From Dimorphilus gyrociliatus (Eukaryota; Animalia; Annelida): 64,000 bases of DNA. Each line of letters opens with the position of its first letter. The first letter of the stretch is position 1. The notes under the pieces are model-generated. The model had not been told where the DNA came from. It worked only from the letters and a program-made list of their open reading frames with translations, and made no database searches. Shown here in pieces: positions 1,838 through 64,000 of the stretch. The translations under genes were made by a program, and so were the position numbers. The stretch is from positions 1,233,713-1,297,712 of the forward strand of contig CAJFCJ010000004.1 in NCBI GenBank assembly GCA_904063045.1, read 5' to 3'.

Positions 1838-3928
1838 ATGGGGGATTCTTGGTTAGCTAATTCTACGAATTCTTCCAACTCTAATAATGATACTCAACAT
1901 ATGTCGTTTGCTGTAAAATGCACTGCAGATATTATTGGAAGTTTAGCAATTTTTGCTAATTTATCTTTTTTATTGGCTTTAAATTATTTAAAAGACAAAA
2001 CATCAGCTTTTTATAGATTTTTAAGAAATCTAAGTTTTACTGATCTCATGTCGTCATTAACTTTTGTTATAATTCAAAATTGGAAAGGAGTAAAGTCTGA
2101 GTACTTTATTCTTAGGTATCTTTTGAATTATACTTTTAGATCTATTCCTTGGATGTTTCTCACTTGCTATTTCTTAACTCTATTTTGTCTAACTTTAAAT
2201 CAATATATGGCTGTATGTAAACCGTTGAAATACAACCAAAACTTAGGAGGCAATTGTGTCGAAATTGGAATGATTATTGTTTGGCTCTTTTCATCTCTAC
2301 AAATTGTAATACCGCTAATCTTCATCTCGATAATCTATTTTGAGAAATCCAAGGAAATAAACAAAGATACCTTATTTCATATAAACAAAATCGAAGTACA
2401 AATATGGTTGGGTATTTTTGCTGTTTTTGCTGTTTTAATAATAGCGCTAAATGCTAGCATATTCTCAAAGATCAAGCAGCTTAAAGCATCATTAAAGTGG
2501 AATATTTTTTTAATTTAAAAATATGTAAAAAAAAAGATGGAAACTCAATGGATATACTTTGTAGGACTTATTTAATAATTTTAACAGTTTTTAATATTTT
2601 AATTGTTAAATTCTTGATTTATCATTCTTATAATGATCTTTTCTTTATTATTATCCTCTCAGAGCTTTTTATGACTAGTAATACAATACTAATTAAAATT
2701 AATTTCTCATGAACTGAAATGAAGAGATCTGCCTCCCACACAATTAGAACAAAAGGAGTACACGTTTTATAAATCATGAAAAAGTGAGGAATTATAACCT
2801 TAACTAATTCATATTTAATATATTCGTTAAAATATTTAATATAAAACAATAGTTAATATAAAAATTAATTCAGAGTAATGGACTTTATGTAGTATATAAA
2901 ATTCAAGTACTATCTTATATCTTAAATTAACTAATATTAATTAATATTAATTAATTTTTTGCATATTTGTAATTAATATTCATGGTATTCACTGCAGGTT
3001 GTTAATTACTTTACGTATAGCCTCGAGGTGTTTTTCATTGCATTAAATAGAAACGGCTGACAATAAAGCATATTAATTTTTATTAAAGTTCATCGCCAAT
3101 TTTTAATGATCTATTTCTAAAATATCAACTTGAATATTAAACGTTTATTGCATTTTTTTAAAGCTAAAGTTCGTAAGCAAGAAAGAAAGACAGACATAGG
3201 CATAAATAAAATTAATTAAATTTTTGTCTATCTAAACTTTAAGTTAATTTTAGATATGCTTGAATGCTATTCAAAAAATAACTAGTAAGCTATTATATTA
3301 TATACTAATATTAAAATCATTTAGTTGACAATAGAGGTTATACTGTATATCTTTTCAAAGAAACTAAAAGGAAACTAAAATAGACTAACTGGAAGAAATA
3401 ATGTTTAACAAGAGATTCTTTTATCTTTTATATTTAATGATGCTTTATGTAAGAAGGTTTACGACTAGACCTGAAGAGAGCCATAACATAAGGACTAAAG
3501 AGGAAGCGTCAATAACAGTGGTTCTTCTATTATTAACTTCTCTACTTTGTCGACTACCCTTTCCAATTACAGCTATAGCTGGATTGAATTTTTATGAACG
3601 TCCTACACTTTATATGATTATGAATAGCACCACTACTCTGTTGTTGTACATAAATTTTACTATAGATCCTGTAATCTACGTGCTAAGAATGAGGGAAATA
3701 AGAATGGTTATCTGTAGTTTAGTTGCAAAATGTTTTAAGTGTCAATTTTCGGGCATTGAAAATGAGAACAAAATGACAAGAGGAAAGAAAAGAAGTGGAT
3801 ATTTTTCTGTTACACAAAGTATTTCAACATGGAAAAATAAAGGAACAAGGGATCCAGAGACTCTTTATCAGGAAAATAGAAACGATGATAATGGATTAAG
3901 AACCGAAAACACAGAAACTCACTTATGA
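1838..3928 (+). CDS. Orphan class A (rhodopsin-like) GPCR, 2 coding exons (1838-2496, 3454-3928), about 377 aa
   Basis: Exon 1 has N-glycosylation sequons (NST, NSS, NDT) and TM1-5, including LNQYMAVCKPLKY at the DRY position. Exon 2 has TM6 (LLCRLPFP) and TM7 (NFTIDPVIYVLR). The phase-2 donor AA|GT at 2497 matches a phase-2 tandem acceptor (TAAG|AAG|, exon start 3454 or 3457). The donor (GTGGAA) is weak. Confidence 0.85.
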
Positions 3929-23914: not shown

Positions 23915-26900
23915 TCACCGAGTCTGTATGCGACGTAACTCTTCGTGATGTTCATCACAAAGCCATCGAACTTCTTTTCCAATATGCAATGGTTTCAATT
24001 GACCGAATCCTCCAGAGCTTATATCTATTCTTAAAAACCTAGCGATTTCAAAGCGATTGCCGGCAGGATTTTGATGAAATATTGAATCAGCTGATACGGA
24101 ATTTCCAACTTTAAAATAAAGATCTGGAAAACCGTCATTTGCATTCGCTAATACTTTTGTTAGCATTGTCACTACTCTGTCCTTGTTCTTTGTTAACCAA
24201 GCTAATGGATCTTGAATATGTAAATCAACTGAACCTAAGTATTCATACATTTTAATAAGATCAGCAATTACTGGGGCTAGTAATCGACCATTGTGACCAT
24301 GCTCGTGCACACCATTAACGATTTGAACCATTGATAAAGCCATATTGAGTAGAACTGGCAATTGATTACCTACTCGCCTTACAAAATTCTGAGATTGACA
24401 TAGACGAAAACCTGGCTCGTCTGTTAGATGCCAGTAACCTGTGTATTCGCATAGGAAATGCACTTCAAACCCTTCAAGGAACTTGATTCGGGAATGTAAG
24501 TACCATTCTTTGTTCGAAGCATTCATAGATGGAGGTAAGACAAGGACCAGCCGAGGATGTTCGTAATCAGGAAGAGCGCTTAATGAACTCGTAGTTGGAG
24601 CATGTGGAGGAGGTGTATAGTGACCAGTTAAAGCCCTCGTCCAACTACCGAGGTTATGCCACCTTGAACAAATTGATTTTCTTCGATCAGAAACCAAGCG
24701 GAGTGGAATTCTATCTGCCCTGGCTTGCCTATTCAGGACACATTTTGGACACAGGAGATAAATCTCTCGTTCCTCTATAAAACTTCTCGCATCTTGTGTT
24801 TCTCCAGTGCTTACACTAATACAACTAACAGAACAAGAAATACTACAGTCGTTAACGGAACCCTGATATATCCAATCATCGAAGGTATCCTCAACATCGT
24901 TCAAATGCAGTTGGAGAAAGCCAAGAACGGCTTTAACAACACAACAAGGTTTGGGACCTCTAGCTGTAACTTTCATTGTTTGAAGTCTTGGATCAACTTC
25001 CACATGTACCTTATGTAAAATATCGTCCTCTAGTGAGACATTTCCTGCACATTGACAATCGTCACAGCCACCAACATCGAGAGCTGTAAAGAAAACTATA
25101 TGGTGGCTGAGGAAGACTGGAGGAGGATCGAGGACCAGATCTAATAATCTCCTGCCTTCCCTACAAATTTTTAAAACAAGATCCGATAACATGCAAGGTT
25201 TAATCGCTCGGATTTCCATTTCGTAAGTAACCTGTCTCTCATCCCAATCCGGTAGATCCGGCCATACGTCAGAGTTTGGTTGACCGAATTCTAAGAGTGA
25301 CGGTATCAAGTAACGCTTTTCGCCATCAATGTCTCCTACTATAGCGCACATATCTAATTTTTCCAAAGCTCCTAAAAGCCAATGTGCGCTAGATACCCCT
25401 TCAATTCCTGCTTTATTCAATTGTCTATCTAATTCTCGATCTCTCAAGCATTCCAGCATTTCATCCAGCAGCAGAACCGAAGCATCAAGATCTGTTAGAA
25501 CCCCATGCAGGACTCGTATAAACCACAATGGATTAATGACCACCAACTTTGATAATATGGAGTCAGCAGTGAAATGAACTAGTTTTCCGCGTTCGTGAAA
25601 GTATTGTAACATAGGCTTAATGTGATTACCACCTATTTCAAAACTTCTTGCGATATTTATAACTTCATCATAGGTTATACAAGGTAGTGTGGGAGCTTTT
25701 TCAATTATAAAACCAATGTGACGAATAAACGCCAACCAATTGGGTGGTATTGATCTCTCTGGACGTTGGGTTGCTCTTACAATAGCGGCTTTCAGTTGCT
25801 CAATAGACACGTTTGATTTTTTAGCATCTTTTGGAAAGTTCTTCTTCGAATCAATCTCGTAATAACCAACTACATGCGGAAATCTTACTCTTCCCAAAGC
25901 AGGGGGTGTCTGAATCACGTGACCATTTGGTAAACTTTCTTCAAGTAGTGTCAGATCGACGAATCCGGCTCCAGGACAATTCCTTCCGGTACCTATTTAA
26001 AAATAAATTATAATTTTCATTTTATGAAACAAATAATCAATAAAATCGATCGAAATAAGATCGAAAACTCATAAAATATATAATTCTAGTGTATAGACAA
26101 TTGTTTCAACTAAGCAGAAAATTTTATAATACTATATTTATGAATTAATAATTAAAATTTTATTAGACACTGTAAAGAAATAACAATTTCTTGGGAGTAG
26201 AATTTACTAGAATTAGGCACTAACCTATTAGCAAAATGAGGTAGCTACGCTAATGAATTAATAATTATCTTTAACAATTAGCTAATTTTAACTTGGTAAA
26301 GAGATTTCTGGTTCTGACTGTCAAGATTAAAACTCTTTATCCTTATGCTCAGTTTAGCTAGTATGTATTAATAAGTATATATATATGTATAAGATAAACA
26401 ATAATCGAAATATCACATAGAATAAATCGGCATCTAAGCTCTCATAATAATATCGTCGGATAAAAGTAATTTGTCAACTAAAAGTAAAATAGGCCTAGTT
26501 TTCTGATATCTAGTACGACACATTAATATTCATAAATTTTTCTTCGTATACACAATCCCTCTCCTTATCTAGAATATATTGAACTGGTAATCATTCTTGC
26601 ATCTATTTAAGCAACGTTCTAATAATTTTTTATGGCATCCATTAAAAACCTTCACTACTATTTGGAAGTGATATATTATTAATAACATTTCACCTTGGTG
26701 ATAAGGAATATAATTACAATATTCATATTATGTATTAAATATTATTTGTTGTGTGTGCATATAAACAAAGACAAATTGTGCACTACAGAATTTCTTGAGA
26801 AGCACTAGAACGAAAAAAATCTCAAGAACTGCAAAATACAGCCATTAAAAACAACAAATTGGCGGTTTGTTATTATTCCACAAAGTAATTACAGAGGATA

Positions 26901-29900: not shown

Positions 29901-31286
29901 TAAATGAGATAATAATAACTCCTTATCATGTCTGACGAATGATGGTAATAACATAAGATTCTCATAGCGGAAACAAGTTAAGCGTTTTATTAGGTCAATG
30001 AAAACTGACGGTATCGTTTCGATTTTGTTATGGCTTATATCCAATACCTGGTAAAGAAAAATTTGCAAAAATAGACTATACATCTTCTATGTAAAAACTA
30101 GATGAATAGCTATACACCTAATAGGATAATTTAGCTATATAATCATACAGCTATTATATATAAATATATAGTATATATATACTATATATATATTTTTTTA
30201 TATTAATATAGGGTTAGTTAAAGATTTAAACCTGTACCTATTGTAGTTCAGGTCAAAATCTTCATTATTTCTCTAAATTGTTAATCTACGCACCTGTAAG
30301 TGTCGTAAAGATGCTAATTGATTTGGCAATTTGCTTATCCGATTAGCTCTGCACCTTAGTACCTTTAGCTTTGTCAATGAACTTATAAAATTAATATTCC
30401 GCACCCCATTATTGCTGAACGATAGCGACCTTAAATTATCCAGTTGCGTTATGGTATCCGGCAAATGGGACAGTTTAGGCGTTTGAAAATCGCAAGAGAA
30501 CGACCTAAGTGCCTTGAGACGACAAATTTCCGGCGGTATTGCTGCCAGCCTATTCCTATCCAATTTCAAATGCTCTAGACTCTCGATTTGCAATATTCCA
30601 TCCGGTACATATGTTAAATAGTTGTTACTTAGAACCAGAGCCGTTAACGGTAGGCTACAAAGTTCCTGGCATCCAACATCAGCAGAATGGAGTTTACATT
30701 GTATTAAATAGAGAGACGTTAATCTTGTTGCATCTACCCTTTGCACGAGTTGCTCGATCGATGGTAAACAAGCGTCTCGAATAACTATCATATCCCTAAC
30801 ACAATCCCGTCCGGGAGCCAGGCTATTCTCCATATATTCCATAGTATTCTGTTTGACGAATAGCATGTACTGATCTCCAAAAGATTTTCGCTTATAAAGC
30901 GTTGAATCGACATCACAGGTTCTTGAAAGTAAATCATCAACAACACAGGTCGAAGGTAGAGCTTTACTGCTCTGCAAAGCATCTGTCCTGTCTAGATCGA
31001 ACGATGGAGATTCAATAATCATTTTAACAGCTTCTAGATGACCTAATTTCAAAGCAAGATGTAAAGGAGAATCTTTCTCGGCAGTTCTATCTTTTACATT
31101 TACATCGCAACCGAATTCGATGAGTTCGTTGAGAACATCAAACTTTTCATCCAATAGAGCATGATGTAAGATTGTCCGCCCATCCTCGTCCTGCTGATCA
31201 ACATCATTTTCGTGGACGAGAAGTTCTTTCAATTTCGAAATTTGCCCTTGCTTAATGAATTCGATTAGCGGTTCGATAGAGGACAT
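23915..31286 (-). CDS. Kinase-less ROCO protein: ankyrin repeats + LRRs + Roc-COR + extra C-terminal module; 3 coding exons, about 1269 aa
   Basis: Exons 31286-30294, 30047-29309, 25992-23915 (phases 0 and 1 consistent; 3810 nt). ANK motifs (GRTILHHA, DSPLHLA); LRRs (LTALVLSNNYLTYVP, LEHLKLDRNRLAAIP); P-loop GESHSGKST; G4-like VLIVGTHAE; COR motifs (YFHERGKLVHF, VVINPLWF, YLIPSLL, LLCPKC). An in-frame TGA lies upstream of the ATG at 31286. Confidence 0.9.
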
Positions 31287-42926: not shown

Positions 42927-45223
42927 TCAACTTCTAGACACAGTTAATGGTCGCTTCTTGCGCCATCTACAAGTCAATATTCGCCAATACGTCCTCCTAA
43001 AGTTAGCGTTACATAAAGCGTAGCAAAGTGGATTTATTGTACTATTTATATAGCATAGCCAGTACCCTAGAAAAAATAATGAAAGTATAAAAATGTTTAT
43101 TAAGAAATTAGATTTTTAGAAATGGGTGTCTTTAGTCTACGAGATAAAGAGATAAATCGAAAATAAGAAAATGAAAAGTTAGAGAAAGTTGGAAAAAAGA
43201 AAGGAAGAAAGAGAGCGAGAGAGAGAGATAGAGAAAGAGAGGAGAGATTAGAGCGTGTGTATGTGTGCATGTGTACAGGAAGAAGTGAGGAAGAGAAGAG
43301 ATGAAATAAATAATGGAGAGAGGGGTTCAACATATTTTCTCAATAAATTTTTATAGGAAATAGATTAATATTGTCTCTTTCTTTCTTTCTTTCTTTCTCA
43401 CTCACCCACTCTCACTCTCTCTCTCTCTCTCTTTTCACTTTTCTTCCTATCTTTCTCTCTTTCTCTCTCTCTCTCTTTCTCTCTCTATATAGATATATAT
43501 TTCTCTCACTCACTCTCTCTTTCTCGTGAAAAACAATTAGTGTATAAATTAGCTTATCTGAATTCAATTTTTCGAGAATCAATTAAAAGTTAGGTACTTT
43601 CCTTCTTCTGTTAAAAAATACGGTTGAAAATTTGGCTTTTTGTTTTGTTCAATGAGTTTAAAAATAAAAAAAGAACTACAAAAAAGTGAATTTGTGTTTT
43701 CTAGGAAAAGAAAAGCTTTAAAATTATGCTTCTGTATAGAGCAAATTTAAAAAAAAGAAGGAGGACATTAGCCTAGAGTCTACTTTAAAAGTCCTCATAG
43801 TGTCGATATTCAAATGAATGTTAATTATTTTGAAAGAAGATATTTACCTATACCATAGACTGTCTCGTGGACAAATCCTGGCTGAAAAGCTTCAACAAAA
43901 ACAAACAAGTTGTAAGGCGTCCAAGTAATTATAAAGGCTAGCAGAATAGCACTCAATGTCTTGGCAGCCTTCGTGTCTTGCTTCCTTTCGTGACCTCTCC
44001 TACGTTCTTTGTGATTCGGTAATTTCCGAGTTCTTTTCAAAAGTTCTTCTTCCGTGTCGTCCTCGTTGTACATCTTTATGGAAGCTTTAGAACTTCCTTC
44101 TTCTGGAAGTTTGATTAAAATTGTATATGTATCAGCAATATCATCAGGTGGTTTTGAAATGAGAGGTATCATTCTCTCATTCTTTCCATTTTGCTTAGGT
44201 GATGTATTACTCCATTCGTCTTCATGATCAGTTTCATCTGCTTCATCAATTTTGCAACATCTCCTCCAACAATACCTATTTCTCCTATTTGAAATCTCTT
44301 CATCGGAATCCGTAGAATGAGCTTGTAACTTCTCTAACCCCCTTTGTCTCTTTTCAGTTTCTAAGTAGATTTTGAAGTAAAGCACACACATAATAAAAAC
44401 AGGAAGGTAGAAGGCTGCTATAGCTGTTGCTATTGTCACATACTGATTACTCTTTAAGAATTGGATATAACAATCGTCCTCAGGAACAGTTCGACGGCCC
44501 TCTAAGTGTGGCCAACCATAAATCCAAGGTGTCCAAAGTATTATTGAGACGACCCAGGCGCAGAAAATCATAATTGCTGCTCTTTTTGGTGTTCTTTTTG
44601 CTCTATAGGTTAGCGGTCTAGTTATACTCAGATACCTGAATAGGAGGGTATGCAAAAACTTTACGTAATAATTAGCGATATTTATACGTACGACGGGGAT
44701 TTAAGGCCCCGATTTATAATTGATCCTTATTTATGAAATAGGACTTTAAAACGACTTGATTATATATTCTGTGGCGTTAACGTTTTTGATTGCTTAAAAG
44801 GAAATAAATAATAAAGCGAAAAGTCCCTTTGAAAGTGATAAAATTTTACGTGACTAGCTAACGAACTAACTCAAATTACCTGTCGAAGCTAATCAGTAGA
44901 AGATTAGCAACGCTCGCATTGCTCATAGTATAATCCAAAGACAGCCATAAATCGCAGGCAATTCCACCCAACGGCCAGGACCTTCTTATTAATTGCACAG
45001 TATACAAGGGCATTGAGAATAGGCCTATAGCTAGATCAGCGACGCTTAAGCTGAGTAAGAAATAATTGCTAACGGTTTGTAATTGCTTGTCCATCTTGAA
45101 GCTGATCATAACCATTAAATTTCCGCCCGCCGTAAGAGTGGCGATAATCGTAACGATAATGGAGACAATAACGATTTCGGATAGGGAAGCCTGGTCCCCG
45201 GAAGTGGAATTAGTCGAATTCAT
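42927..45223 (-). CDS. mAChR-A: Muscarinic acetylcholine receptor, A-type (M1/M3/M5-like); 3 coding exons, about 423 aa
   Basis: Exons 45223-44880, 44635-43848, 43066-42927 (1272 nt). Motifs [82 protein letters not shown]. The orthosteric Asp/Tyr/Asn residues are intact. The last exon is not in the ORF track. Confidence 0.95.
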
Positions 45224-60952: not shown

Positions 60953-63671
60953 TTAGTCTTGAGTTTCTTTGCTCGACTTGCTTGAAATAGGTGTGGCTGT
61001 TGAACTTCTGCTCAGCTGGAAAGCCCATTTCTTGATAATCTTCTCAGCTGCAGCTAGTGTTTCATCTTTCTGTATTATTTTTACAGTACCATTAATAGTT
61101 TTTTGAATTATTGACTCAATAGAATGTATGCGAAACCTTAATAAAACAGAATCTTATCATATTCTCAACCAGTACTTTATGATCTTGGCTATAGAATGCG
61201 CTTGGTGGTATTCCGGATAGTTTCTTATAAGACAATAGAATAAGTAATAAGAAAAGTGCGAACGTTCATTGGATAATTTATCTTATTAAAAATACCTTAT
61301 TTGCTATCATCCATTTAACAAACTGATAATCTTTCGGTTCGTTTGAATCTCCCAAGTTAATTTCGGGGCTAGCATTCATTAAACCAGAATAATCGGCAAT
61401 CATAAAATACCCTCCGTCAGGTATAATGGGCTTCATCCCAACTTCTTGTAAACATTTCGCTAAGAAATCTCGCTTCGGCTGCAATTCCCTGGCTAATTTT
61501 AATAAATAACAATCTTTACAGCCGCTTCCTAACTTTGGAATTTCTCTTTCAACCGCCATAGCAATAGCCTCCTACAGATTTAATGACGAAGAATTATTAA
61601 ATTTTATAATGAATTATTTGCATAAAAATAAGAACTTGTAGAGGAGTAGGGCAAGTATATGAACAATTTTGATGTAACACCGAGCAAGCCTTAACTAAAT
61701 GCGGTGGTCCGATAGTCCAACCCAATTTCCAGCCAGTTACCGAGAAAGCTTTTCCAGCGCTACTAAATGTCAAAGTTTGGTCGTACATACCAGGAAGATT
61801 TGCTGTTTTGAATATGAGAAAATGGAAATAAAATATCTTAAAAATAAATCGAAGTCTTCTGTTTTTCATTCGGAACTAAATCGATCTTTCTTTTATTTCA
61901 TTGAGAAAAGTAAGAAAGTAAAAGTCATTTAAAACATTAAGCAGCGGGATTAACTCTATAATATACAAAATCTTTATATTTTTCGTATTTCTTAAGAAAT
62001 ATCGATATTTATACCTTCCAATCTTATATAATAAAATTTATTGAATTCTCGCCCTCTCATTTCTCATCTACAGTCTTCTTAATATAAATTATCTTACGCT
62101 ATACAGAGACCTGCACCGGTGTAGCAGCTGCGCAAACAGAATTCTGATGAACAGTCCTAAGCGCGTGTATAAAATAATCAGGCCCTATAACCCATCCTAC
62201 TCTCCACCCGGTTATCATCCATGTTTTCCCAGCACTTCCCATTGTTAAAGTTCTTTTCCACATATCAGGTAGAGAGGCTGATAAATGATTTCGTTTAAAA
62301 CGTTTACCAACTATCTCAGAGAATATCTTTTAGTCAATAGATATTTCTCAATTTTTGTTTTTAATACAAATTCATATTTGTTGCTTTTTTTATTTACAAA
62401 AAATATAGCTTACCTATCTTTATGTGTTTTTTATCATCGTATATAAGCCATTCATAAACTTCATCGCTAAAAACGATAGTGTTATATTTTTTGCATAAAT
62501 CAGCTATCATTTCACATTCTTCCATGGAATAAACCTACAATGTTTATCAAAAGAAAAACTAATTAAAAGATAATAAAGTTTTTTTAAACTAGTTATATTA
62601 TATCTGTATAAATTCCCGATAGAAAGAACGTACTTTGCCCAAAGGATTGTTTGGATTATTAAAGAATATGGCTTTAGTTTTATGCGAGAATTTCGAAGAC
62701 AATTCCTCGTAGTCTAGACAGAACTCCGAACTTTGAAAAGATGCCCTCTCAGCATCTTCTGGTTTTTCAATCTGTATTTTTTGTTGTTAGATAAAGGTTC
62801 TCTATTGAAATTAGAGTCTTTAGTAAATATTATAGTACAAACCCTTCTTAGAGGGACAAAAACTGGTACACCGCCAGCAACTCGAACCATAGGCTCGTAG
62901 CAATCAAAAAAAGGTTCAATAATAATTACTTCATCTCCAGGATTAATAAGTCCTTGAACAGCACAGAATAAACCTCCATAGGCACCAACTGATATGAGAA
63001 TTTCATTCATGGGGTCAATAGGGTGATTCATAAGTGGAGAGTACAAATCGGCTAAAGCTTTGACCAATCTTGGATGTCCGTATCCTTTGAAAGTATTACA
63101 GGCTAGTATAATTCCTTACATTGAAATTTTTGTCAAATTATAATCACCTCTAGTATATTGGTTTAAAAAAGGATTATCACTCATTACAGCTTCTGCAAGA
63201 GCTTTTTTAACATATTCAGGCGCATGAAAATCTGGGAATCCCTAGATTTTATAAAAGAAAAATAATCAATATACTGTATTTTATTGAGTAGAAAAATATT
63301 CTCTTTATTTGCTTACTTGTCCTAAATTCAAAGCTTTTTCCTTAACAACTAAATTTCCGAATTCAACCCTATATTAATTTTAAATTTCATAACATATTAA
63401 CAATTTTGAACAGATTTAACAAATATAAACAATAAAAAAAGTTTATATTAAAGTCTTTTTAACAAAAACTAGCTAAAGAGACGCTTATATTAACTATTTA
63501 CTTGTCCTAAATTCAAAGCTTTGTACTGGGTACACAACTTTCCAAATTCAGCCCTTTAATAATTTTATTGAATATATTGGTTTTTGTTTTGCTTCGTAAA
63601 ATTGAAATTCTTACTCACCAAACATTTTGATCTGTCCCTTGTAATCTATCAGCCAATCCGTGGTGTGCCAT
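60953..63671 (-). CDS. KYAT: Kynurenine-oxoglutarate transaminase / glutamine transaminase (KAT I/III, CCBL family, PLP fold type I); 10 exons per mRNA, about 448 aa, with two mutually exclusive exon pairs
   Basis: Exons 63671-63619; 63553-63502 or 63368-63317; 63241-63148; 63084-62843; 62771-62634; 62534-62414; 62277-62111 or 61802-61636; 61571-61296; 61223-61137; 61069-60953. Total 1347 nt with one exon of each pair. Motifs LNLGQGFPD, NQYTRGYGHPRL, IIIEPFFDCY, NNPNNPLGK, SDEVYEW, SAGK, GGYF, IRFCFIK. Confidence 0.95.
61636..61802 (-). CDS. KYAT: KYAT alternative exon 7b (167 nt): ANLPGMYDQTLTFSSAGKAFSVTGWKLGWTIGPPHLVKACSVLHQNCSYTCPTPLQ
   Basis: CAAAACAG| acceptor, CAA|GTTCTT donor, same length and phases as 7a, homologous sequence with the PLP lysine. 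Confidence 0.9.
62111..62277 (-). CDS. KYAT: KYAT alternative exon 7a (167 nt): ASLPDMWKRTLTMGSAGKTWMITGWRVGWVIGPDYFIHALRTVHQNSVCAAATPVQ
   Basis: TTTATCAG| acceptor, CAG|GTCTCT donor, phase 1 to phase 0, open frame containing the PLP lysine (SAGK). Not in the ORF track. Confidence 0.85.
63317..63368 (-). CDS. KYAT: KYAT alternative exon 2b (52 nt): (W)VEFGNLVVKEKALNLGQ
   Basis: AATATAG| acceptor, CAA|GTAAGC donor, same length and phases as 2a; shares the identical 3' sequence AAAGCTTTGAATTTAGGACAA. Confidence 0.85.
63502..63553 (-). CDS. KYAT: KYAT alternative exon 2a (52 nt): (W)AEFGKLCTQYKALNLGQ
   Basis: ATTAAAG| acceptor, CAA|GTAAAT donor, phase 2 to phase 0. Confidence 0.85.
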
Positions 63672-64000
63672 TTTCTTTTCCTTTAAATAAAAAAGTAAAG
63701 GAAATAAAACTTTAATCAGTTTGATATTATCTTTTATAAGTTAATCTAGAGACGATTTACTACAACGTTAAGTGCATATTAAGTACCAATTGCAAAATAC
63801 GAAGTAAAAAAGGAAAATAGAGGCGTTCTAGTTTAGAAGAGCAAGGTAAGACAACTTATTGTAATACAAAGTAATTCAGTTTTTAAAGGGCGCAAGGGCA
63901 ATTTCATTTGGGAACAAAATCAAGTAAGCTTTATTGTCTTGCATCAATAGTAAATCTGATCTAATAATTGACCATCCAAAAAGGTTTTGTTACTTTTCAC

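What the first reader, a model, noticed from the sequence alone, without database searches (positions are those of the whole stretch)
61636..62277. Duplicated, mutually exclusive catalytic-site exons in a kynurenine aminotransferase
Seen: two tandem homologous exons of exactly 167 nt (62277-62111 and 61802-61636), both phase 1 to 0, both with open frames, AG/GT ends and the PLP-lysine motif (GSAGKTWMITGWRVGW vs SSAGKAFSVTGWKLGW). Including both or neither breaks the frame, so they must be mutually exclusive if both are used. Established (human KAT I numbering, from memory): this segment carries the Schiff-base Lys247, the phosphate-binding Lys255 and the pocket residues Phe278/His279 donated to the partner subunit. 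The two exons differ at these positions: Arg vs Lys at 255, and QNSVCA vs QNCSYT at 278/279. Exon 7a resembles vertebrate KAT I (LRTVHQNSV) and 7b resembles KAT III/insect KAT (HQNCxYTCxTPLQ). Inference: one locus switches active-site chemistry by splicing instead of gene duplication. I do not know of this being described.
Basis: partly seen in the sequence, partly recalled or inferred. Interest (0 to 1): 0.92.

Follow-up and report, generated by a model that had tools for sequence, protein, structure and literature searches.

The report
Alternative catalytic exons in annelid aminotransferase
A kynurenine aminotransferase gene of the tiny marine worm Dimorphilus gyrociliatus carries two diverged copies of the exon that holds its catalytic lysine, and public RNA data show each copy spliced into messenger RNA without the other, so one gene can make two enzymes with different active-site linings.

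Summary
On the minus strand, 62277-62111 (7a) and 61802-61636 (7b) are homologous 167-nt exons. They share phase and AG/GT ends, and both keep the PLP-lysine motif. The gene is Dimorphilus gyrociliatus KAT (DgyrCDS2916/2917). Both deposited models use only 7b.

Public RNA contigs show 7b joined to exons 8-10 at high depth (run X7). One contig in run X6 is exactly exon 6 - 7a - exon 8, skipping 7b. So mutually exclusive use is supported, with 7a the minor, unannotated form.

Synonymous sites between the copies are saturated, yet 7a keeps 23 of 28 family-invariant residues and exon-like GC, so it has stayed under selection.

Four other annelids and a nearby paralogous gene have this exon once. 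The duplication is therefore lineage-specific, and it exists alongside gene duplication, not instead of it. The KAT I versus KAT III resemblance is a weak score lean that a tree cannot resolve. Any change in catalysis is untested.

A second 52-nt exon pair (2a/2b) lies in the same gene. The scan had flagged that pair and 30-odd similar cases elsewhere in this genome. This is a new member of a known kind, tandem-duplicated mutually exclusive exons.

The parts
62111..62277 (-). Exon 7a, 167 nt. Minor, unannotated alternative exon encoding residues equivalent to human KAT I 230-285, with Lys247, Arg at 255 and Cys-Ala at 278/279.
   Evidence: Open frame, AG/GT ends. The X6 contig joins exon 6 to 7a to exon 8. 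The X7 contig joins exon 6 to 7a. 23 of 28 family-conserved residues kept.
61636..61802 (-). Exon 7b, 167 nt. Major alternative exon, used in both deposited gene models, with Lys247, Lys255 and Tyr-Thr at 278/279.
   Evidence: X7 contig at depth about 1023 joins 7b to exons 8, 9 and 10. P0154 and P0269 contain it. 25 of 28 conserved residues kept.
61803..62110 (-). Intron between 7a and 7b, 308 nt, long for this species. Retained in a low-depth RNA contig. An in-frame stop follows 7a after three codons if it is retained.
   Evidence: X7 record 5 is colinear over 61775-62279. The ORF ends ...PVQVSV*. Median intron is 66 bp (PMC7854359).
62278..62413 (-). Intron between exon 6 and 7a, 136 nt.
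   Evidence: Joint 62414 to 62277 in X6 and the loose end in X7.
62414..62534 (-). Constitutive exon 6. Ends in phase 1 and donates the G of the first codon of 7a or 7b.
   Evidence: Gene model.
61296..61571 (-). Constitutive exon 8, the acceptor for both 7a and 7b.
   Evidence: Joints 61636 to 61571 (X7) and 62111 to 61571 (X6).
63502..63553 (-). Exon 2a, 52 nt. First of a second tandem pair, encoding the helix after Trp18. No transcript evidence found.
   Evidence: 81% identical to the Owenia exon 2.
63317..63368 (-). Exon 2b, 52 nt. Used in the deposited models and in run X14.
   Evidence: The X14 loose end matches 2b with 1 mismatch and 2a with 3.
60953..63671 (-). Whole coding region from ATG to stop of the KAT gene (DgyrCDS2916/2917). 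It has 10 exon positions and 12 exons counting both pairs, and gives 448 aa in every one-of-each combination.
   Evidence: Introns 61224-61295 and 61070-61136 are spliced in X7.

Best explanation
Exons 7a and 7b are an old tandem duplication of the PLP-lysine exon of a Dimorphilus gyrociliatus kynurenine aminotransferase / glutamine transaminase K-type gene. They are spliced in a mutually exclusive way. 7b is the default and retains the ancestral pocket residues (Phe249, Ser250, Lys255, Tyr278-Thr279). 7a is a minor, so far unannotated alternative with Trp249, Met250, Arg255 and Cys278-Ala279. Either exon alone gives a full 448-aa enzyme with the Schiff-base lysine intact. Including both or neither shifts the frame into an early stop. 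Exclusivity at the protein level is therefore enforced by reading frame, and probably by nonsense-mediated decay; this step is inferred. Which exon is chosen is most likely set by competition between weak splice sites and by trans-acting factors; this step is also inferred. Residues 278/279 are donated across the dimer interface to the partner's substrate pocket, and residues 249-255 flank the cofactor. The two isoforms are therefore expected to differ in substrate preference or cofactor handling; this is inferred and untested.
For: Shown: same length, phase and splice signals. Frame arithmetic. 7b to exon 8 to 9 to 10 is spliced at high depth in X7, and exon 6 to 7a is spliced in X7. A 226-nt X6 contig of depth 14 equals 29 nt of exon 6, all of 7a and 29-30 nt of exon 8, with GT..AG at both joints. 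That is the shape of an alternative-path bubble in a k=31 assembly, which implies another path between the same flanks in that run. Five RNA runs hold 58-75% of the 7a words but only 9-12% of the words of the surrounding 1.5 kb. Constraint on 7a: pS 0.72 (saturated) against pN 0.36, GC 0.46 against 0.22-0.25 in the introns, and P(open by chance) 0.003. 23/28 family-conserved residues are kept, against 25 for 7b and 26 for a separate paralogous gene. Mean identity to 39 other KATs is 0.565, against 0.604 and 0.584. The one strain difference listed in 7a is synonymous. Arg at the 255 position occurs in related aminotransferases (TGWRVGW in P0001, TGWRIGW in P0002). Pocket roles of 278/279 come from PMC4926479.
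Against: The 7a-to-exon-8 joint rests on one assembled contig from one run. Its flanks are 29 nt, below the 31-letter rule the read tool gives for bridging, and the contig comes from a slightly divergent strain (95-99% class). In X7 the only 7a-containing contig retains the 308-nt intron and would encode a truncated protein. Its depth is about 38 against about 1023 for the 7b contig. Neither deposited model contains 7a. No protein fragment with 7a exists in the 5.8-billion-protein collection. 7a changes five otherwise conserved residues, including the invariant Lys255 and Tyr278, which could also be read as relaxed constraint. The exon 6 to 7b joint was not seen directly in the contigs laid; it is taken from the deposited models. 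No enzymology exists.
Confidence: 0.75

Rival explanations
1. 7a is a residual or regulatory exon and not a protein-coding alternative. Its acceptor is used at a low level, but the products are mostly intron-retaining or frame-shifted RNAs that are degraded. On this view the exon 6 - 7a - exon 8 contig is rare splicing noise.
For: In X7 the 7a contig retains the downstream intron and is about 27-fold shallower than the 7b contig. The 7a donor (CAG|gtctct) is weak. 7a is absent from both deposited models and from the protein collection. It has five departures at conserved positions.
Against: Synonymous sites are saturated while the frame, exon-like GC and 23/28 conserved residues survive. A non-coding exon would not keep Ser244, Lys247, TGW, GW, GP and HQN. 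The X6 contig is the exact in-frame product at depth 14. The 7b donor (CAA|gttctt) is just as weak.
Confidence: 0.13
2. The exon pair is ancient (bilaterian or older). On this view 7a-type and 7b-type exons are the ancestors of vertebrate KAT I and KAT III, which split the two splice forms between two genes.
For: 7a scores best against human KAT I (72.4 bits, against 65.5 for KAT III). 7b scores best against KAT III and mosquito KAT (76.6 and 73.0 bits, against 65.8 for KAT I). 7a shares LRTVHQNSV, Val256 and GPD with tetrapod KAT I. The AU test does not reject 7a + KAT I (p 0.47).
Against: Owenia, Capitella, Paralvinella, Helobdella and the D. gyrociliatus paralogue each have one copy of this exon, and all are 7b/KAT III-like. 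About 100 annotated isoforms from molluscs, arthropods and a tardigrade show no exon-7 swap. 7a lacks the KAT I pocket motif (Tyr/Phe-His, no T-P) and keeps T-P-x-Q. The shared residues also recur in unrelated lineages. The AU test equally allows 7a+7b (p 0.44).
Confidence: 0.04
3. Assembly artefact: the second copy is a mis-assembled allele or a collapsed or expanded repeat.
For: None found.
Against: The copies differ at 44% of bases and sit in unique intron sequence. Independent RNA runs from several studies contain each copy, and one X7 contig spans 7a, the intron and the start of 7b colinearly with the window.
Confidence: 0.01

Closest known systems
Mutually exclusive exons from tandem exon duplication in enzymes and channels, for example mammalian ATE1 exons 7a/7b (PMC7797038) and the catalogued human and Drosophila cases (PMC5740500, PMC9741552, PMC9013439)
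   Same: Adjacent homologous exons of identical length and phase. Exactly one is included, and the isoforms are identical apart from one homologous segment. The duplication is old and both copies are under selection.
   Different: No competing RNA structure could be shown here. The swapped segment carries the PLP Schiff-base lysine of a fold-type I aminotransferase. I found no described KAT or aminotransferase example. The duplication is confined to one annelid lineage.
Vertebrate KAT I (KYAT1/CCBL1) and KAT III (KYAT3/CCBL2) paralogues. Solved structures: 1W7L and 3FVS (human KAT I), 2ZJG and 3E2Y (mouse KAT III), 1YIZ (Aedes KAT)
   Same: Same family and the same exon-encoded segment. The paralogues also differ at the pocket residue 278 (Phe in human KAT I, Tyr312 in mouse KAT III), which shifts the pocket's polarity (PMC4926479).
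   Different: There the diversity comes from separate genes. Here it comes from one gene by splicing, in addition to a separate paralogue. 7a has Cys-Ala at 278/279 and Arg at 255, which none of 39 compared animal KATs has.
D. gyrociliatus paralogue DgyrCDS2920 (P0272)
   Same: Same species, same contig, same exon boundaries. It is also altered at position 278 (Asn).
   Different: A separate gene, 59% identical overall, with single copies of exon 7 and exon 2.

Membership tests
Tandem-duplicated mutually exclusive exons (MXE) | Neighbouring exons that are homologous and have the same length and phase | tested here: met
   167 nt each, phase 1 to 0, 26/56 aa identical.
Tandem-duplicated mutually exclusive exons (MXE) | Each exon is spliced to both common flanking exons in mature RNA | tested here: met
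   6 to 7a in X6 and X7. 7a to 8 in X6 (one contig, 29-nt flanks). 7b to 8 in X7. 6 to 7b was not seen in the contigs laid; it is taken from deposited models P0154 and P0269.
Tandem-duplicated mutually exclusive exons (MXE) | Transcripts with both or neither exon are absent or non-productive | tested here: inconclusive
   Frame arithmetic makes both (299 aa) and neither (240 aa) truncating. No 7a-to-7b joint was seen, but only assembled contigs of a few runs could be examined. An intron-retaining RNA containing 7a and the start of 7b exists in X7.
Tandem-duplicated mutually exclusive exons (MXE) | Both copies under purifying selection | tested here: met
   pS 0.72 against pN 0.36, exon-like GC, and 23 and 25 of 28 conserved residues kept. 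A lineage-specific dN/dS for 7a alone was not possible because no close relative is available.
MXE controlled by competing RNA secondary structures (docking/selector type) | Intronic complementary elements that pair better than chance | tested here: not met
   Best intron-intron duplexes give z -0.9, -1.6 and +1.1 against dinucleotide shuffles. The inverted repeats are AT-rich and weak. No relatives are available to test conservation.
Kynurenine aminotransferase / glutamine transaminase K (fold-type I aminotransferase, Pfam PF00155) | Sequence membership, and the PLP-lysine in the S-A-G-K motif at the position of human KAT I Lys247 | tested here: met
   P0154 carries PF00155. Both exons hit KAT I, KAT III and Aedes KAT structures at E 1e-17 to 5e-21, with Lys aligned to 247.
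Kynurenine aminotransferase / glutamine transaminase K (fold-type I aminotransferase, Pfam PF00155) | Transamination of kynurenine or glutamine by each isoform | not testable with these tools
   Needs expression and assay.
Vertebrate KAT I orthology of exon 7a | 7a groups with the KAT I clade to the exclusion of 7b and invertebrate KATs | tested here: inconclusive
   The ML tree leaves 7a unplaced on a long branch (0.51). KAT I is a 100/99 clade without it. The AU test rejects neither 7a+KAT I (p 0.47) nor 7a+7b (p 0.44).

The most novel reading that the evidence does not exclude
The gene is a two-site combinatorial switch. The exon 2 pair encodes the helix after pocket residue Trp18. The exon 7 pair encodes the cofactor lysine segment and the residues donated to the partner's pocket. 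If the two pairs are chosen in a coordinated, tissue- or sex-specific way, up to four subunits result. Because 278/279 act across the dimer interface, mixed dimers would have two unlike active sites. This could be one instance of a genome-wide tendency of this compacted, gene-poor genome to hold enzyme diversity in duplicated exons.
Probability: 0.15. Interest if true: 0.7.

Novelty: new member of a known kind. Interest (0 to 1): 0.42.

Why it matters
It adds a clear case in which alternative splicing swaps the catalytic-lysine segment and part of the substrate pocket of a PLP enzyme. I could not find this described for kynurenine aminotransferases or other aminotransferases. It gives a natural pair of active-site variants on an identical scaffold, including an Arg for the otherwise invariant Lys255 and a Cys for Tyr/Phe278. 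Such a pair is convenient for asking what these residues do for substrate choice in the KAT / glutamine transaminase K / cysteine-conjugate beta-lyase family. It also corrects the public annotation of this gene, which lacks 7a and 2a and truncates the C-terminus. Together with the scan's other notes, it points to a possibly systematic use of duplicated exons in a miniature annelid genome known for gene loss.

Tried and rejected
1. Search of 1.84 billion representatives with 7a: no near-copy, best 61-67% identity. The 'two-stretch' hits were fused tandem genes, a multi-exon duplication or intron read-throughs, not the same exon pair.
2. Word-index search with 7a alone: no candidate.
3. Search with the organism's own protein: no dinophilid relatives closer than about 62%, so the duplication cannot be dated and no 7a-specific dN/dS can be computed.
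4. Exact look-up of P0154 in the contig index: not on record.
5. Same-species isoform pairs and about 100 cluster members: no exon-7 swap elsewhere.
6. Segment phylogeny: unresolved, so no origin claim is made.
7. RNA-structure selector model: no better than shuffles, so it is not adopted.
8. Two metagenome scans, one for the junction-spanning pattern and one for a 7a core: empty.
9. Runs X1, X2 and X4 hold 7a words, but no contig was laid because of a filter.
Full report
**What is in the sequence**

On the minus strand, 62277-62111 (7a) and 61802-61636 (7b) are each 167 nt. Each is preceded by AG and followed by GT. Each is open only in the frame that borrows one G from the upstream exon, which ends at 62414.

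The two 56-residue translations share 26 residues, and the DNA shares 93 of 167 bases. Each alone matches solved kynurenine aminotransferase structures at E 1e-17 to 5e-21. With the composition of the neighbouring introns, 55 codons would stay open by chance with probability about 0.003.

**The gene and the organism**

I reconstructed the whole gene from ATG 63671 to the stop at 60953. It has ten exon positions. Two of them are occupied by tandem pairs: 7a/7b, and a 52-nt pair 2a (63553-63502) / 2b (63368-63317). Every one-of-each combination gives 448 residues.

- Including both 7a and 7b gives a 299-residue truncated frame.
- Including neither gives 240 residues.
- Both or neither of the exon 2 pair stops after 36 residues.

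A profile search seeded with the window's exon translations found P0154, 'DgyrCDS2916 [Dimorphilus gyrociliatus]'. It is 100% identical to my 2b+7b isoform over 381 residues. Its cluster mate P0269 (DgyrCDS2917) adds an N-terminal presequence from an alternative 5' exon. Both deposited models use 2b and 7b, and both end in a retained intron after exon 8. 7a and 2a are therefore not in the public annotation.

**Transcript evidence**

Only assembled contigs of public runs were available, not raw reads.

- **Run X7, 7b form.** A 621-nt contig of depth about 1023 joins 7b to exons 8, 9 and 10.
- **Run X7, 7a form.** A second contig of depth about 38 carries the last bases of exon 6 spliced onto 7a. 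It then runs colinearly through the 308-nt intron into 7b. That RNA would stop three codons after 7a.
- **Word shares.** A run search with 7a alone showed that five RNA runs hold 58-75% of the sampled 7a words. The same runs hold only 9-12% of the words of the surrounding 1.5 kb, which fits a mature RNA containing 7a.
- **Run X6.** A 226-nt contig of depth 14 consists of 29 nt of exon 6, all of 7a, and 29-30 nt of exon 8. Its joints are 62414>62277 and 62111>61571, and the skipped stretches have GT..AG ends.

The X6 contig is the in-frame exon 6 - 7a - exon 8 product with 7b skipped. Its shape, an insert flanked by about k-1 letters on each side, is what a k=31 assembler emits for one arm of an alternative-path bubble. 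This suggests a second path between the same flanks in that run; that point is my inference.

Caveats:

- It is one contig from one run.
- Its flanks are two letters short of the tool's own 31-letter rule.
- It comes from a slightly divergent strain (95-99% class).
- The exon 6 to 7b joint was not among the contigs laid, and I take it from the deposited models.
- No 7a-to-7b joint was seen.

**Is 7a a living exon?**

Between 7a and 7b, synonymous sites are saturated (pS 0.72; only 21/56 third positions are identical). Non-synonymous divergence is 0.36, and 40/56 second positions are identical. Both exons have GC 0.43-0.46, against 0.22-0.25 in the flanking introns.

I aligned the segment with 39 other animal KATs, from sponge to vertebrates, and looked at the 28 columns that are at least 90% conserved.

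| Segment | Conserved columns kept | Departures | Mean identity to the 39 |
|---|---|---|---|
| 7a | 23/28 | F249W, S250M, K255R, L265F, Y278C | 0.565 |
| 7b | 25/28 | W236Y, R238Q, G243S | 0.604 |
| Paralogous gene | 26/28 | W236F, Y278N | 0.584 |

The departures of 7a and 7b do not overlap. The one strain difference listed inside 7a (62195) is a synonymous GGA>GGG change. A dead copy old enough to saturate silent sites would not look like this. Arg at the 255 position is found in related aminotransferases (P0001, P0002), so K255R need not disable the enzyme.

**Age and origin**

The homologous exon has exactly the same 56-codon boundaries and occurs once in Owenia, Capitella, Paralvinella and Helobdella. 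It also occurs once in a second D. gyrociliatus KAT gene (DgyrCDS2920, P0272, 59% identical), which lies on the same 2.5-Mb contig but outside the window. Exon 2 is also single in all of these.

About 100 annotated isoforms in ten clusters of molluscs, mites, a tardigrade, bees, wasps and locusts show no exon-7 substitution. The exon is therefore ancient, and the duplication belongs to the Dimorphilus lineage.

7a scores 72.4 bits to human KAT I against 65.5 to KAT III. 7b scores 76.6 to KAT III and 73.0 to Aedes KAT, against 65.8 to KAT I. A 56-column ML tree leaves 7a unplaced on the longest branch (0.51, against a median of 0.10). AU tests reject neither 7a+7b (p 0.44), nor the three D. gyrociliatus segments together (p 0.45), nor 7a+KAT I (p 0.47). 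7a lacks the KAT I pocket motif and keeps the T-P-x-Q of KAT III and invertebrate enzymes. I read the KAT I likeness as homoplasy.

**How it probably works**

*Shown:* two alternative, frame-compatible exons, with 7b dominant and 7a minor.

*Inferred:*

- Exclusivity at the protein level follows from the 167-nt length, with decay of the frame-shifted both and neither forms.
- Exon choice is by splice-site competition. Both donors are weak (CAG|gtctct and CAA|gttctt). The introns involved (136 and 308 nt, and effectively 539 or 611 nt) are long for a species with a 66-bp median intron, in which longer introns are retained more often (PMC7854359). That fits the retained-intron RNA in X7.
- A competing-RNA-structure selector is not supported. 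The best intron-intron duplexes are no better than shuffles (z -0.9, -1.6, +1.1).

*Functional consequence (inferred):* Lys247 forms the internal aldimine. Phe278 and His279 of human KAT I are donated by the partner subunit to the substrate pocket, and Phe278 corresponds to the mobile Tyr312 of mouse KAT III (PMC4926479). 7b has Tyr-Thr there, like KAT III and invertebrate KATs. 7a has the much smaller Cys-Ala, and the paralogue has Asn. So the worm has three different residues at this pocket position. 7a also changes the residues just after the lysine (Trp-Met for Phe-Ser) and has Arg for Lys at 255. A difference in substrate range or cofactor environment is likely, but it is untested.

**Comparison with what is known, and novelty**

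This is a tandem-duplicated mutually exclusive exon pair, a well-known kind (PMC5740500, PMC9741552, PMC9013439; ATE1 7a/7b in PMC7797038). Full-text searches that combined mutually exclusive exons with kynurenine aminotransferase, KYAT/CCBL names or aminotransferase found no description of such a pair. That holds within the limits of that library. I file it as a new member of a known kind.

It does not replace gene duplication, because the species also has a paralogue.

The scan had already noted the exon 2 pair and the combined locus in this genome (s1-080859, s1-081643). It also noted 33 tandem-exon candidates genome-wide. Those notes are unchecked except that I confirmed the exon 2 sequences and found 2b, but not 2a, in transcripts.

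**Verdict**

Mutually exclusive use is supported by transcript contigs and by sequence constraint (confidence about 0.75). The KAT I / KAT III framing and 'instead of gene duplication' are not supported. The catalytic switch remains a hypothesis. Interest is moderate.

Noticed in passing
window 63502-63553 and 63317-63368 (minus strand): A second tandem pair of 52-nt exons (2a/2b) encodes the helix right after pocket residue Trp18. Both or neither breaks the frame. 2b is used in the deposited models and in run X14. No transcript evidence for 2a was found, although 2a is the copy more like the Owenia exon 2 (81% against 65%).
   Followed up: partly
window 61224-61295 and the deposited models P0154/P0269: Both public gene models read into the intron after exon 8 and stop (...VFLIR*). 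The RNA contig in X7 splices 61296>61223 and 61137>61069, giving a 448-aa protein with a normal KAT C-terminus. The annotation is therefore truncated.
   Followed up: yes
window 63672-63680 and beyond 64000: An acceptor at 63680 receives an alternative upstream exon that lies outside the window. That exon adds a 26-residue basic presequence in P0269. Run X14 shows the homologous exon from a divergent lineage joined at the same place. This may be a mitochondrial-targeting isoform, as in other KATs.
   Followed up: partly
L002:10001-11831 (GCA_904063045.1, CAJFCJ010000004.1): A paralogous KAT gene, DgyrCDS2920 (59% identical), lies on the same contig. It has single copies of exon 7 and exon 2 and has Asn at pocket position 278. 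Its exon-7 segment groups weakly with 7b (84/86).
   Followed up: partly
L001:7940-8488 (Owenia fusiformis KAT locus): The intron between exons 6 and 7 holds about five tandem partial copies of the 3' end of exon 6 (residues about 210-235, 44-52% identity), spaced about 120 nt apart.
   Followed up: no
window 61925-61943 and 62291-62309: A 19-nt direct repeat (15/19 identical) lies upstream of 7b and of 7a. It is probably a remnant of the duplicated intron sequence.
   Followed up: no
window 23915-25918 and 30273-31286 (minus strand); 1838-2518 (plus strand); 43825-44655 (minus strand): Long open frames elsewhere in the window include a ROCO-type protein (ankyrin, LRR and COR-A domains) and rhodopsin-family GPCRs.
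   Followed up: no
runs X3, X8-X12 (coral metatranscriptomes): Near-identical fragments of this worm's KAT mRNA turn up in coral metatranscriptome runs. This suggests that Dimorphilus, or a close relative, lives in those coral samples or aquaria.
   Followed up: no
P0001 (Macrostomum lignano): A 672-aa model fuses two adjacent KAT genes. One copy has TGWRVGW, the same Arg-for-Lys255 change as 7a.
   Followed up: no
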